From the NCBI RefSeq assembly GCF_003704095.1, contig NW_020847747.1:124001-188000 (forward strand): DNA of 64,000 nt, given 5' to 3'. The DNA comes from Pocillopora damicornis (lineage: Eukaryota). The notes beneath the pieces were generated by a model. That model saw only the letters and a list, made by a program, of their open reading frames with translations. It ran no database searches and was not told where the DNA came from. Positions 591-36,132 of this stretch are shown piece after piece (positions within the stretch are counted from its first letter, which is position 1; every line of letters starts with the position of its first letter). A program made the translations under genes and the position numbers.

Positions 591-1925
591 TGGAAGGAAA
601 CGATGAAGACCGTGATTACAGAGACTTTTATGAGTATGATGACGACGATAATGGCATCAAAAAAGCTGAAAAATGCCCCGATATTAACTTACCCAGAGGT
701 CTTGGCGGCCCTTGCAAAGTCAGTGATTTTTGCAGCAATATTACTTGCGAGGTGAAGGTGGGGGAGAAGAGTGCCACCTTAATTTTCAAAATAAACCAGT
801 GTGATGATCCCATAACTGCCACAGTCACTGTCAAGATACAAGGTTATGCAGTTGATTGGTCGCATACATTTAAGGATGGTGAAAAGATCAAGCTTCCGGT
901 TGGGAAGGAATCCGGTGTAATGGCACAAGGATCAGTTTCACTTTTGGTTGTGTTGAAAAGAGAAGGCAAAAAGTTGCATTTTAAGGTAACATGTTTATTG
1001 TATATAACTTTACTTCATTGCAGGGGGGGGAGGGGAGTAACCAGTGAAAAAAGGGTTAAGCGGTAGGGAAAAATCAATCACCAGAAGAAAAGGGCCTTGA
1101 GATGGGAAAACAAAAACAACTCTTGGCAGTGAACGGTTATTTTTAAATACGTACGTCACCACTGATTACCGAAAGTGTAAATATTTGCAGCAAGGATGGA
1201 TAAGAGATTCAGACTTGCCAGTTTCCCAACCCCCCCCCAAAAAAAAAAAAAATTTTTATTATTATTATCACCATCATCTTAAAGAAATACCAGCGAGTTT
1301 ACTGATTTAAAAGATTGATTTATTTCAGCTTCAGTTGTTGGGAAAAGTTGAAGTACCATTATATCACAAACTGGACGGGCCCATCGATAAAACTCTGATC
1401 GACGGAAAAATTTCGCTGTCAGATAAACATTGCGGTGAGTAAAGAATTATGTGTTTATTAGGGCTGCAAGTTTTCTCCTTCATTTAGAATCCCCTAAAAA
1501 TCACTCAGCTGTGAATTTAGAAACACAACCTTCTTCACCATGACAGGAGCCCATTACTTCCTAACCATGATGAGGATATCTGTCACTTTCCCACTCCTCT
1601 AAAGCAATAAAAAATGACTGGTCTCTGAGAGATCATGATTTCTGGCCGCTTCCTTAATGCTTCGTAGAAGTTGTTGACACGTTTTGTGATTACGTCATCA
1701 GGTTTCAGCGCTTGGTTCAACAAACAGCCGCGTTACATAAAGATTTTGGTGATTGCGGGCCCTATCTTGGTCTTTATCCTTCTGCTCGTGCTCACAGTGT
1801 ACTGTCGTATGAGATGTAAGCACCGTGCGCCCACACGCCTTCATGTGGAGATGCCGAGTCATCGTGCCCGGACCACCACGACCAGAAGTAAAGTTCCTAT
1901 GCAACGGCTGATAAATCAGGAATAA
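591..1925 (+). CDS. Gene 1 of uncharacterised Cys/beta-domain type-I membrane protein family (5' partial)
   Basis: Exons 591-985, 1329-1434 and 1702-1925, all GT-AG and in frame (phases 1,0,1). Acidic N-terminus DEDRDYRDFYEYDDDD; domain CPDINLP..CKVSDFCSNITC..CDDP..WSHTFKDG..HCG; TM ILVIAGPILVFILLLVLTVY; tail ending KVPMQRLINQE. The signal exon is presumably upstream of the window. Confidence 0.85.
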
Positions 1926-2754
1926 ATATGTGTGCATATACCCTGAAAACTCAGGGCGGGAAGCACGAGATGGAAAAATAAGTGAAAACTGAAGAAACCA
2001 CTTCAAGTACAAAACAAATTAATGACCATAAAAGACAATTAAACTACGCGGAAATCTGCGAAAACTGCAGAAATTACCAAAAAGTAAATTTGATAAAGTA
2101 TTGGAAACCGTACGATACGTTAATTATTCTTAATTTGATTGACATTTATAAATAATTTCGTTTACCTATGCATAAGCAAACAAACATGTATGCGGCACGT
2201 GTCTCATCGCTCCATATATGGCACTGTTCCACGTGCTTACAACGGGACGTTGAATGTTTTTTCTTTCGAATAAGCCGAGAGTTAACCCGAAGCGTTGTAG
2301 TAAAATCTTAAAATCAAGTGAATAAACCGTGAGTTAATAAGGAAGCGTGGTACAGCTCTTTCACGTTTTCAACAAAAGGAGTTAAATATATACTTTTCAT
2401 AAGTGATCAATTTGAACTAAACTTATATCAAATTTTAGTGTTAAGTTGGCTTCTGTCGAGAAAACAAACATGATATATGATTCATTATATTATTATACAA
2501 TGAAAGTTTAAGTCAGTGCAGATTTAGAACAATTTATCGAGTTGGTGGGCATTGTATGCTTTTCAAGCTTAAATAAGAAATGTATAACCGTAGAATTCTG
2601 CTTTGTTGTTAGCAGTATAAACAAACATTTCCATTATATCAGAGGAAACTGAATATCATGAGCTTGTTAATATAGTTATAGGGAATTCGAAAATAAAAGT
2701 CAGTTGTAAAGTATGAATCCAGTTTTAAATATACCATCAATATAACAATCTATG

Positions 2755-34500: not shown

Positions 34501-36132
34501 GAAAATATATAGGGCTCAGTAAGGAGAGTGTGCATACTGATTTTAGGGTGTAAATGGTTAAGCAACAGAGAACTCGTTGGTGAACCACACCAATATGAAG
34601 TTCAAATTTAACAAGCGTCTTTCTATAACTTCAAGGGAAGCGACTGACAACTTTCTTTCTCTAACGGCCCCCATCGACCAGCTTTGATCTGAAAATCACG
34701 AAAAAGCGCAAAATTAACTTATTTTACTGCCCATTAGGTCAACAAGTGCGATGACCCAATCAGTGTAACAGCCTCAATGGATGTACCTGATCTGGGTATC
34801 TCCTGGTCTCATACTTACACCAGTGACGACATCATAAAAGTCCCAGGATTCACTGTGTCGATACCAGTTCTCCCAATTTCCGCTGGTGTGTACGTTCAAG
34901 TCTCTCTCACTCCAAACGGTGATGAACTGAAACTTACGGTCAGTACTCGATTGACGATATCATGGTGACTGAAAAGAGACAATTTATTCCCAGTCTAAGT
35001 TCTGCAACTTTCATCCTAGCCCTTTGATCTAAGAGTGACTAGCGTCTAATTTCTCCTCACAATATCACGACTGAATCACACACTTTGGGGCAAGAGAGGT
35101 TAATTTGGTAAATGTAAAGAATCTAACAATTGTTGTTTCTATTTGCAGGTGAAGCTCCTCGCTGGGGGCCAGGTTGGGGATAAAGGAGTTTATCCTGTGA
35201 AACTACCTGTGATAGACGGTAACCTGCCCATTAACACCAACGCCTGCGGTAAGTGATGATGTATGTAAACTGTCAAGAGCATTCCCAACAAATGGATTTC
35301 TTTCACCACTCGATAGGAAACTATCGACAATTGTTAAACATTTCTTGTTATTCAGTAATAGTTGTTATTCAGTGAAAGGGCAAGGGAATCTCGTGAATGG
35401 CCTGGTTGATTTAAAAAGGAGGAGGACGGGCGTTCATTGGGGGCCTGGGAGAGCAAGAGGTGGGAGCCAAAGAGAATAGGGGATGGTGCCGTGGACAATG
35501 AGGGGGGTGCTCAGGGGAAGCCCGGGAGAAGAGGTGATGGCAATCCGCCTCAAGAATCGGGTGTGGAAGGAGACAGAAGGAAGAAGGAAATAAAAACAAA
35601 TGCGGGCAATCGTCATCATTAATCNNNNNNNNNNNNNNNNNNNNNNNNNNNNNNNNNNNNNNNNNNNNNNNNNNNNNNNNNNNNNNNNNNNNNNNNNNNN
35701 NNNNNNNNNNNNNNNNNNNNNNNNNNNNNNNNNNNNNNNNNNNNNNNNNNNNNNNNNNNNNNNNNNNNNNNNNNNNNNNNNNNNNNNNNNNNNNNNNNNN
35801 NNNNNNNNNNNNNNNNNNNNNNNNNNNNNNNNNNNNNNNNNNNNNNNNNNNNNNNNNNNNNNNNNNNNNNNNNNNNNNNNNNNNNNNNNNNNNNNNNNNN
35901 NNNNNNTATGAACGATATGGAAAGAGGAGCTGTGGTCGGAGGCACCATTCTTGTACTCATCATCCTCATCTCTACCTGTTGCTGCTGCTGCGGCTGCTGC
36001 AGCTGTTGCAAACCTGCTCGGCCCAATCATGGAACTGTGTTTATCCAGCCTCCTGTTAGTGTGGGGCCTCCTGTCATGGCAACCAGTACTAAGACTACTG
36101 TCCCCATGCAACCGTTTGTTAACGAGGCTTAA
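31541..36132 (+). CDS. Gene 7 of the family (poly-Cys subfamily)
   Basis: Exons 31541-31616, 33760-33929, 34738-34938 and 35149-35248; the last exon starts inside gap 35625-35906 and ends at 36132 (TM, TCCCCCGCCSCC, ..TVPMQPFVNEA*). Confidence 0.85.

What the first reader, a model, noticed from the sequence alone, without database searches (positions are those of the whole stretch)
1900..36132. Conserved C-terminal motif M-x-[PR]-[LFM]-x-N-[EQ]-x* across otherwise unrelated tails
Seen ends: VPMQRLINQE (g1), YGMRRLSNEL (g2), VPMEPLVNEE (g3), VPMQPLVNEI (g4), IPMQPMVHRF (g5, partly diverged), VPMQPFVNEA (g7). The motif stays at a fixed distance from the stop while the rest of the tails diverge. 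It does not fit canonical class I-III PDZ ligands, [DE]xxxL[LI] or DxxLL signals. Inference: an undescribed linear docking or sorting motif for a shared cytosolic partner.
Basis: partly seen in the sequence, partly recalled or inferred. Interest (0 to 1): 0.75.

Follow-up and report, generated by a model that had tools for sequence, protein, structure and literature searches.

The report
Conserved tail end of coral receptors
Six of eight neighbouring coral genes for an unnamed family of membrane proteins end in the same short peptide, which they inherited from a common ancestor and which corals and sea anemones have kept, so it probably binds a partner inside the cell that is still unknown.

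Summary
Shuffles of the window give 0.02 matches on average, against 6 observed. No assembly gap interrupts any of the six.

The tails are not "otherwise unrelated". They are the last exons (membrane helix, Cys cluster, 30-45-residue tail) of a tandem array of paralogues in Pocillopora damicornis. The tails align along their whole length.

The array has eight genes. Six carry the motif. Two, g6 and an upstream g0, have short tails without it.

The consensus V-P-M-x-P-L-V-N-E-x is the most conserved block of the last exon. Synonymous sites differ between paralogues and the 3'UTRs are unrelated, so the constraint acts on the protein.

The motif recurs in Acropora, Montipora, Porites and Actinia, and in altered form in Nematostella. 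Jellyfish and deuterostome relatives lack it.

In this genome it is private to the family. The family has no Pfam domain and is annotated only as "uncharacterized".

I read it as a family-specific cytosolic docking or sorting motif. Binding is inferred, not shown.

The parts
653..988 (+). g1 ectodomain exon (4-Cys domain, no Pfam)
1329..1436 (+). g1 linker ('mid') exon, ending ...KHCG with a GT donor
1701..1925 (+). g1 last exon: membrane helix, Cys, tail. The motif VPMQRLINQE plus stop is at 1893-1925.
6356..6686 (+). g2 ectodomain unit a
   Evidence: RNA-run contigs and the joint 6684>7338 in 4 of 4 runs
7340..7423 (+). g2 linker exon a
   Evidence: joints 6684>7338 and 7422>7995 in 4 of 4 runs; frame
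7996..8328 (+). g2 ectodomain unit b, skipped in an alternative joint 6684>9334 seen in 2 of 4 runs
9336..9401 (+). g2 linker exon b
   Evidence: joint 8326>9334 in 2 of 4 runs; frame
10161..10528 (+). g2 ectodomain unit c
10829..10927 (+). g2 linker exon c
   Evidence: joints 10526>10829 and 10927>11571 in 4 of 4 runs
11571..11768 (+). g2 last exon. The diverged motif YGMRRLSNEL plus stop is at 11736-11768.
13508..13729 (-). g3 last exon. PPSY lies in the tail; the motif VPMEPLVNEE plus stop is at 13508-13540.
14062..14190 (-). g3 linker exon
   Evidence: present in the spliced homologue P0155
14479..14793 (-). g3 ectodomain exon (core)
17179..17238 (-). g3 candidate signal-peptide exon
   Evidence: pattern scan, (not tested with RNA)
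18445..18663 (-). g4 last exon. PPSY lies in the tail; the motif VPMQPLVNEI plus stop is at 18445-18477.
   Evidence: 100% identical to XP_027059645.1 residues 170-241
19447..19551 (-). g4 linker exon
20456..20800 (-). g4 ectodomain exon
22625..22684 (-). g4 signal-peptide exon, beyond gap 20914-21438
   Evidence: matches the N-terminus of P0166
23570..23626 (+). g5 first ectodomain exon; its 5' part is lost in gap 23469-23568
23812..24018 (+). g5 second ectodomain exon
24378..24479 (+). g5 linker exon
25006..25257 (+). g5 last exon. The partly diverged motif IPMQPMVHRF plus stop is at 25225-25257.
26154..26228 (+). g6 signal-peptide exon
27573..27665 (+). g6 first ectodomain exon
28318..28497 (+). 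g6 second ectodomain exon
28939..29037 (+). g6 linker exon
29921..30070 (+). g6 last exon: a short Cys-rich tail ending CRCRCR*, without the motif
33840..33932 (+). g7 first ectodomain exon
34738..34941 (+). g7 second ectodomain exon
35149..35250 (+). g7 linker exon
35908..36132 (+). g7 last exon; its 5' end is hidden by gap 35625-35906. The motif VPMQPFVNEA plus stop is at 36100-36132.

Best explanation
The motif is the conserved C-terminal end of one gene family, not a signal shared by unrelated proteins.

The window holds seven genes of a tandem array, with an eighth just upstream, in Pocillopora damicornis. They encode type I single-pass membrane proteins. Each has a signal peptide and one ectodomain of about 110 residues with four conserved Cys and no Pfam model (g2 has three). 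A linker ending in Cys follows, then a W-containing stalk, a membrane helix, a run of Cys (probably palmitoylated) and a cytosolic tail of 30-45 residues.

The tails descend from one ancestral tail. Their last nine to ten residues, V-P-M-x-P-L-V-N-E-x, have been kept by selection on the protein since before stony corals and sea anemones split.

Shown: the anatomy, the homology, expression and splicing, protein-level conservation, and restriction to this family.

Inferred: the peptide is a short linear docking site for a cytosolic protein. Most likely that partner is an adaptor controlling the trafficking or turnover of these receptors. It would work beside the Cys cluster and, in g3 and g4, a PPSY motif of the Nedd4/WW-binding type.
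For: Presence: six exact sites, against 0.02 expected by chance.

One family: an ectodomain profile hits 10 places in the 234-Mb genome, all within C4382:120278-158941. The strong last-exon profile hits (E 5e-13 or better) are the 7 last exons in the window. g0's short last exon, just upstream, was not among the listed hits.

Homologous tails. In 20 tails from paralogues and species, the V-P-M-x-P-L-V-N-E columns carry 2.9-4.0 bits in 8 of 9 positions. This is the longest conserved run in the exon.

Protein-level constraint: codons differ at synonymous sites (GTT/GTC, CCT/CCC/CCG/CCA, CAA/CAG, CTG/TTG, AAT/AAC, GAA/GAG) and the 3'UTRs do not align.

Depth: the motif is present in Acropora, Montipora and Porites and in the anemone Actinia tenebrosa (NVPMQPFVNEI). 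Recognisable variants occur in Nematostella and Actinostola. On a quick ectodomain tree it occurs in both main cnidarian clades.

An unbiased sample comes from the ectodomain search alone: 16 cnidarian proteins with a membrane helix and tail. Eight match a loose pattern and 2 more are evident variants. Three have short tails, and 3 (two of them jellyfish proteins) have other tails.

Expression: spliced cDNA-length contigs encode g3-, g4- and g7-like proteins. GT..AG joints in 4 RNA-run assemblies join all the g2 exons to its last exon.

Topology: a signal peptide, then Lys/Arg and Cys after the helix, which puts the tail in the cytosol.

Trafficking theme: g3 and g4 carry PPSY. Eight of 11 deuterostome-type relatives carry [DE]xxxL[LIVM] 6-11 residues after the helix, against 0.51 expected from shuffles.
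Against: There is no binding, localisation or mutational evidence of any kind.

Two paralogues (g6, g0) and their orthologues do without it. The g2 and g5 copies are degenerate. A g5-like protein from a relative reads its tail in another frame. So the motif is dispensable for some members.

Conservation in the window alone is only moderate: 49% identity in the last 10 residues against about 30% elsewhere.

The set of 61 unique tails is biased, because 32 proteins were found with a profile that contained the motif.

The tree is a quick one. The two key clades have SH-aLRT support of 90-91, which is not strong.
Confidence: 0.6

Rival explanations
1. The motif is a diverged dileucine-type sorting signal. 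Its P-L-[VI] core would be read by the sigma/large-subunit hemicomplex of clathrin adaptors (AP-1, AP-2 or AP-3). It would be the cnidarian counterpart of the canonical [DE]xxxL[LIVM] carried by the deuterostome relatives. This is a specific version of the best explanation.
For: Eight of 11 deuterostome-type relatives have [DE]xxxL[LIVM] in the tail, against 0.51 expected. The amphioxus string D-M-Q-V-L-M resembles coral P-M-Q-P-L-V. From recall, Pro just before the Leu pair is common in lysosomal and melanosomal dileucine signals.
Against: The acidic residue at -4 is a conserved Pro in the coral motif, so the defining pattern is not met. The conserved Asn and Glu after L-V are not explained by this class. 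The deuterostome signal sits 6-11 residues after the helix. At that distance the coral tails carry a different conserved element, G-x-V-x-V-x-P, which may be the true positional counterpart. The coral motif lies 25-40 residues from the helix.
Confidence: 0.2
2. This is the first reader's version: a general linear motif that arose in unrelated tails because different proteins share one cytosolic partner.
For: The motif is conserved and terminal.
Against: The tails are homologous exons of one family. A genome-wide pattern for P-M-x-P-[LF]-[VIM]-N-E hit only g3, g4 and g7, which is 3 of 3 hits; the reversed-pattern control gave 0. The looser P-[LF]-[VIM]-N-E-x-stop gave 40 hits against 40 in the control. 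All 30 of the 37 off-cluster hits that I read were short frames of 7-60 codons with no membrane helix.
Confidence: 0.03
3. The similarity is a by-product of recent duplication or gene conversion between neighbours, or of a constraint on the mRNA 3' end. It would then have no function as a peptide.
For: The genes are tandem neighbours.
Against: Ectodomains are only about 29% identical. Synonymous positions within the motif differ and the 3'UTRs are unrelated. The motif is kept in other coral families and in a sea anemone.
Confidence: 0.03
4. The C-terminal block is needed for the protein's own biogenesis rather than for recruiting a signalling or sorting partner at its destination. Possible roles are ER export, folding of the tail against the membrane or the acylated Cys cluster, or oligomerisation.
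For: The motif stays near the C-terminus, mostly with one residue after N-E. Its core is hydrophobic. The short-tailed paralogues end in hydrophobic pairs, -IV and -VV.
Against: Nematostella has seven more residues after the motif, so a free carboxylate at a fixed distance is not required. Nothing here tests export.
Confidence: 0.12

Closest known systems
Acidic dileucine sorting signals [DE]xxxL[LI] (AP-1/2/3 adaptors; definition recalled, not read here)
   Same: A cytosolic tail of a type I membrane protein with a Leu plus aliphatic pair preceded by Pro. Deuterostome relatives of the same ectodomain family carry the canonical form in 8 of 11 tails.
   Different: The residue at -4 is a conserved Pro, not Asp or Glu. 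Asn and Glu after the pair are also conserved. The motif sits at the C-terminus, 25-40 residues from the membrane.
GGA-binding DxxLL signals and PDZ ligands, the two classic classes that sit at a fixed short distance from the C-terminus (recalled)
   Same: Fixed position next to the stop codon in most members.
   Different: There is no Asp three residues before the Leu. The last residue is not conserved (E, I, A, L, F, V, D), and the -2 residue is Asn rather than S/T, a hydrophobic residue or D/E. Nematostella has seven extra residues after the motif.
PPxY motifs (WW domains of Nedd4-family ligases; recalled)
   Same: g3, g4 and their orthologues have PPSY or PPTY 17-19 residues upstream of the motif. 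This fits tails that control turnover.
   Different: It is a separate element present in only one clade of the family. The other motif-bearing clade has PAVM, PPVM or PTAA at that place.
Coral 'protein shisa-5-like' tandem families (XP_027059621.1, XP_027043198.1 of P. damicornis)
   Same: The membrane helix, CCxCC cluster and R..G-[AT]-V-[IV]-V segment align with the last exon of this family. hhalign gives probability 94% and E 1.3e-7 over columns 10-52. The genome hits have E 1e-6 to 1e-3.
   Different: The ectodomains differ (small Cys-rich repeats). The tails are long and rich in Pro and Tyr. hhalign did not align the motif columns. Helix and Cys composition can inflate such scores. The Pfam Shisa model does not match these proteins.
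Deuterostome 2-3-domain relatives (Ptychodera, Branchiostoma, Patiria, Acanthaster, Asterias, Antedon, Amphiura; all 'uncharacterized')
   Same: The same ectodomain (profile E 1e-31 to 1e-12) and a single membrane helix with a short tail. The multi-domain layout is like g2.
   Different: The tails end differently and none has V-P-M-x-P-L-V-N-E.

Membership tests
Unnamed hexacoral membrane-protein family (P. damicornis LOC113686246 and neighbours) | Ectodomain of about 110 residues with four conserved Cys and the W-S-H-T-F / F-K-V blocks | tested here: met
   The profile of the window's exons hits all 9 ectodomain units of the window plus 1 upstream. It also hits 217 proteins at E<=1e-3. g4 is XP_027059645.1.
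Unnamed hexacoral membrane-protein family (P. damicornis LOC113686246 and neighbours) | Last exon with W, membrane helix, Cys cluster and a tail ending V-P-M-x-P-L-V-N-E-x | tested here: met
   Met in 6 of 8 genes of the array. g6 and g0 have the helix and the Cys cluster but a short tail.
PDZ ligands class I-III | A hydrophobic last residue, and S/T, hydrophobic or D/E at -2 (recalled definition) | tested here: not met
   The last residues are E, L, E, I, F and A. The -2 residue is N, or H in g5. The same holds across the 61 unique tails.
Acidic dileucine signal [DE]xxxL[LI] | Asp or Glu four residues before a Leu-Leu or Leu-Ile pair (recalled definition) | tested here: not met
   Position -4 is Pro in 19 of 20 aligned tails. 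The pair is L-V or L-I.
GGA-binding DxxLL | Asp three residues before Leu-Leu, near the C-terminus (recalled definition) | tested here: not met
   Position -3 is Met, and the second residue of the pair is Val or Ile.
PPxY / WW-binding motif | Pro-Pro-x-Tyr in the cytosolic tail | tested here: met
   Met for g3 and g4 only (PPSY) and for their orthologues. It is a separate element and not the motif in question.
Shisa family (Pfam PF13908, accession recalled) | A match to the Pfam Shisa model | tested here: not met
   No Shisa hit for this family, nor for the coral proteins that NCBI names shisa-5-like.
Any solved fold | Structural similarity of the ectodomain | not testable with these tools
The profile against PDB sequences gave nothing below E 0.18. 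The Atlas holds no model.

The most novel reading that the evidence does not exclude
V-P-M-x-P-L-V-N-E at the C-terminus is a docking motif of a class not yet described. It would be ancestral to hexacorals (stony corals plus sea anemones). It would recruit a conserved cytosolic adaptor to a previously unrecognised family of acylated type I receptors. The ectodomain of these receptors is an unannotated metazoan domain shared with echinoderms, hemichordates and amphioxus. The short-tailed paralogues (g0, g6) would then be natural decoys that cannot signal or be sorted.
Probability: 0.35. Interest if true: 0.6.

Novelty: new variant of a known kind. Interest (0 to 1): 0.4.

Why it matters
Reef-building corals carry many lineage-restricted membrane proteins of unknown function. 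This report turns one anonymous cluster into a defined family with four handles for further work.

- A new ectodomain without a Pfam model, which also occurs in jellyfish, echinoderms, a hemichordate and amphioxus.
- A tandem array that LOC numbering and shared contigs suggest is also kept in Acropora.
- A three-domain member with an alternatively skipped unit.
- A nine-residue cytosolic end that has been held for a very long time.

A short, terminal, well-conserved peptide is a practical bait. A pull-down with it could identify the partner, and with it the pathway, of the whole family.

The recurrence is by descent, and no function is shown.

Tried and rejected
**Family name.** Pfam gave nothing above threshold, either on the exons or on full-length homologues. 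A profile against PDB sequences gave nothing below E 0.18. The Atlas found only an 'uncharacterized' cnidarian cluster and holds no model.

**Literature.** Two full-text searches found nothing relevant. One used gene and locus identifiers plus PLVNE; its 12 hits were all unrelated uses of those letters. The other used six peptide strings from the tails and gave 0 papers. So I found no description of the family or the motif in the held library. Supplementary tables, which were closed, could list these loci in expression or skeletal-proteome studies.

**The same motif in other genes of this genome.** Only 30 of the 37 off-cluster hits of the loose pattern were read. Patterns that would also catch the diverged g1, g2 and g5 forms were not run, because chance hits would swamp them.

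**More deuterostome relatives.** The third protein search returned only 3 proteins, because of the candidate limit.

**Link to 'shisa-5-like' proteins.** Similarity is confined to the helix, Cys cluster and G-x-V-x-V segment. I leave this inconclusive.

**Other motif classes compared by eye, from memory only.** I compared clathrin box, YxxPhi, NPxY/PTB, TRAF2/TRAF6, SH3 PxxP, calcineurin, PP1, 14-3-3 mode III, KKxx and the VxPx ciliary signal. None fits all the conserved positions. These are recollections, not tests.

**Earlier notes of this scan.** Two further look-ups, by words and genome-wide, returned nothing bearing on this motif.

**Joined models.** Exons were searched one by one, and full-length database proteins (for example P0166) stood in for joined models.
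Full report
**What is in the sequence**

They are g1, g2, g5 and g7 on the + strand and g3 and g4 on the - strand. Two hundred shuffles of the window give 0.02 such ends on average.

The window is G000:C4382:124001-188000 of a 234-Mb assembly in 4393 contigs. An exact look-up confirms the species. The g4 product is XP_027059645.1, 'uncharacterized protein LOC113686246' of Pocillopora damicornis, on a contig of 836748 bases. That is the length of C4382.

**Gaps**

None of the six motif-bearing segments is touched by a gap.
- Two gaps lie between the stops of g2 and g3.
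- One lies 393 nt past the g4 stop.
- One lies in the first intron of g4, whose signal exon is at 22625-22684.
- One cuts the first ectodomain exon of g5.
- One hides the 5' end of the g7 last exon. The frame is open from 35908 for 74 codons to the stop.

I filled none of them.

**Anatomy**

Each motif closes a last exon. That exon encodes a short stalk with a Trp, a membrane helix, a run of Cys and a tail of 30-45 residues. Upstream lie a linker exon ending in Cys and one or two exons for an ectodomain of about 110 residues with four conserved Cys.

The ectodomain profile finds 10 copies in the whole genome, all within C4382:120278-158941.

These copies belong to eight genes.
- g0 lies just upstream of the window.
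- g1 is a single-domain gene.
- g2 has three ectodomain-linker units and one tail.
- g3 to g7 are single-domain genes.

That g2 is one gene follows from GT..AG joints in contigs of four RNA-run assemblies. Joints 6684>7338, 7422>7995, 10526>10829 and 10927>11571 are seen in 4 of 4 runs. Joint 8326>9334 is seen in 2 of 4. An alternative joint 6684>9334, which skips the middle unit, is also seen in 2 of 4.

These are Logan contigs, so they show splicing but not expression level.

Spliced, cDNA-length contigs also encode g3-, g4- and g7-like proteins. Examples are 241 aa on a 1000-nt contig, 257 aa on 984 nt and 206 aa on 917 nt.

Exons were used one at a time.

**The tails are related**

The last exons align from the Trp to the stop. 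Besides the terminal block they share K before the helix, CC and R after it, V-x-V-x-P, a Pro, A-T and S-T-K.

In 20 tails from paralogues and species, the columns V-P-M-x-P-L-V-N-E hold 2.9-4.0 bits in 8 of 9 positions. This is the longest conserved run of the exon.

Among the window's six motif genes, the last ten residues are 49% identical. The rest of the exon is 27-31% identical and the ectodomain 29%.

The codons differ at synonymous sites and the 3'UTRs are unrelated. So neither gene conversion nor an RNA-level constraint explains the conservation.

Two genes lack the motif. g6 ends CRCRCR*. g0 ends soon after its Cys run, and so do its orthologues in Acropora.

**Other species**

The profile of the window's ectodomain exons matched 217 proteins at E<=1e-3 among 1.84 billion representatives. 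The best 150 were listed and I read 84 of them.

Named proteins that end in the motif come from these taxa.
- P. damicornis and P. meandrina, whose 487-aa fused g4+g3 models P0169 and P0167 end ...PMEPLVNEE. P. damicornis also has P0166, and P. verrucosa has P0168 (...PMQPLVNEI).
- Acropora millepora (...PLEPLVNEE and ...PMQPLVEEV).
- A. muricata, A. palmata and A. digitifera, named members of the 90%-identity cluster of P0020 (...PMRPLVEEA). I read only the A. muricata representative.
- Montipora foliosa (...PLEPLVNEE). M. capricornis and M. foliosa are also named members of the cluster of P0038 (...PMQLLINEV); their own sequences were not read.
- Porites lutea (...PMEPLVNEE).
- The sea anemone Actinia tenebrosa (...PMQPFVNEI).

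Nematostella has ...VPAKTLVNE followed by seven more residues. Actinostola has ...VPMEPVAARAM.

Two jellyfish proteins (Rhopilema and Aurelia) and all deuterostome relatives end differently.

The 16 cnidarian proteins with helix and tail that came from the ectodomain search alone form an unbiased sample.
- 8 match a loose pattern.
- 2 more are evident variants.
- 3 have short tails.
- 3 have other tails.

Three rows (P0023, P0073, P0094) were dropped as suspect gene calls.

A search with the last-exon profile added 32 fragments. Nearly all end ...PM[QKE]PL[VI]NE[AIVE] or ...PMRPLVNVA. That set is biased by its query.

On a quick ectodomain tree the motif occurs in both large cnidarian clades, and anemone proteins sit inside one of them. 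Support for those clades is SH-aLRT 90-91, which is not strong.

I infer that the motif predates the split of stony corals and sea anemones. That this split is several hundred million years old is recalled, not tested.

**Private to the family**

A genome-wide DNA pattern for P-M-x-P-[LF]-[VIM]-N-E hit g3, g4 and g7 and nothing else. The reversed control gave 0.

The looser P-[LF]-[VIM]-N-E-x-stop gave 40 hits against 40 in the control. Three of those are g3, g4 and g7. The 30 off-cluster hits that I read were short frames without a membrane helix, and 7 were not read.

The last-exon profile has weaker hits (E 1e-6 and above) in two other tandem families that NCBI names 'shisa-5-like'. Profile comparison aligns only the helix, the Cys cluster and the G-x-V-x-V segment, not the motif. 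Pfam's Shisa model matches neither family.

**How it may work**

The topology puts the tail in the cytosol: a signal peptide, then Lys/Arg and Cys after the helix. A nine-residue block kept this long at the end of a disordered-looking tail is best read as a docking site.

I favour an adaptor that governs trafficking or turnover, for three reasons.
- One clade (g3, g4) carries PPSY beside the motif.
- The juxtamembrane Cys run suggests acylation.
- The deuterostome relatives carry a canonical [DE]xxxL[LIVM] in 8 of 11 tails, against 0.51 expected from shuffles. Three of those tails are sea-star orthologues or paralogues, so they are not independent.

The coral motif itself fails the dileucine definition, because it has Pro at -4. 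It also sits far from the membrane. The G-x-V-x-V-x-P element may be the real positional counterpart of the deuterostome signal. All of this paragraph is inference.

**Limits**

There is therefore no fold and no public gene table for the neighbours.
- Motif-class definitions are recalled.
- Two literature searches found nothing on the family or the peptide. Supplements were closed.

**Verdict**

This is a real, conserved, family-specific C-terminal motif of an unannotated coral and anemone receptor family, inherited rather than convergent. Its function as a docking or sorting site is plausible but untested. Interest is moderate.

Noticed in passing
window 19847-20044: A 198-nt palindrome with arms of 99 nt that are 97% complementary and no spacer. 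It lies in the g4 intron between the ectodomain and linker exons. Rfam gave no hammerhead match at E<=1, only sub-threshold hairpin-like miRNA models.
   Followed up: partly
window 6356-11768: g2 is one gene with three ectodomain-linker units and a single tail. RNA-run contigs also show a form that skips the middle unit, with joint 6684>9334 in 2 of 4 runs. A candidate signal exon lies near 4130-4200; it was seen only as an open frame and was not tested.
   Followed up: partly
window 6852-7219, 7588-7955, 8324-8691, 9612-9979, 11084-11451: These intronic stretches have summed contig depths in the thousands to about 100,000 in RNA-run assemblies, with many 'goes back' joints. They behave like copies of highly repeated, transcribed interspersed elements.
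   Followed up: no
G000:C192:174-261 kb and G000:C4375:217-243 kb (loci L045-L052): Two tandem clusters of intronless-looking genes that NCBI names 'protein shisa-5-like'. Each has 1 to about 10 small Cys-rich repeats, then a helix, CCCCACC and a long Pro/Tyr-rich tail. The helix, Cys cluster and G-x-V-x-V segment resemble the last exon studied here. Pfam's Shisa model does not match them.
   Followed up: partly
window 13508-20800 (g3 and g4): The GenBank model RMX60919.1 (pdam_00003435, 487 aa) fuses g4 to g3 and drops the last residues of g4. RefSeq keeps g4 alone. In Acropora millepora, isoforms X2 and X3 of LOC122946963 share a signal peptide but have a g3-like and a g4-like body respectively. 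In this window each gene has its own candidate signal exon.
   Followed up: partly
window 25006-25257 (g5) and protein P0023: The g5 motif is the most degenerate (IPMQPMVHRF). A g5-like 257-aa protein from a relative reads the tail in a different frame and has no motif. This could mean decay of this paralogue, or an error in that assembly.
   Followed up: no
window 46518-47153 (+) and 51108-51392 (-): Two similar open frames in inverted orientation about 4 kb apart, both reading ...WFVSR.DG.F.NNCGL.AS.PCKT.QQV..HAS.GD.INIDGT.TSR.PYPC... They have no Pfam match.
   Followed up: no
proteins P0003, P0059, P0083, P0085, P0093, P0212, P0213 (not in the window): The ectodomain is an unannotated metazoan domain. 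It occurs two or three times per protein in a hemichordate, amphioxus, sea stars and a crinoid, and also in a brittle-star protein without a detected membrane helix. All are 'uncharacterized'. Eight of 11 such tails carry a canonical acidic dileucine pattern.
   Followed up: partly
protein P0073 (a model of g6): This database model of g6 reads the TGA after CRCRCR as Trp and runs on for about 60 residues. I take it for a gene-caller artefact from another genetic code. The stop overlaps a good GT donor (CCG|GTGAGG), so a further spliced exon cannot be excluded.
   Followed up: no
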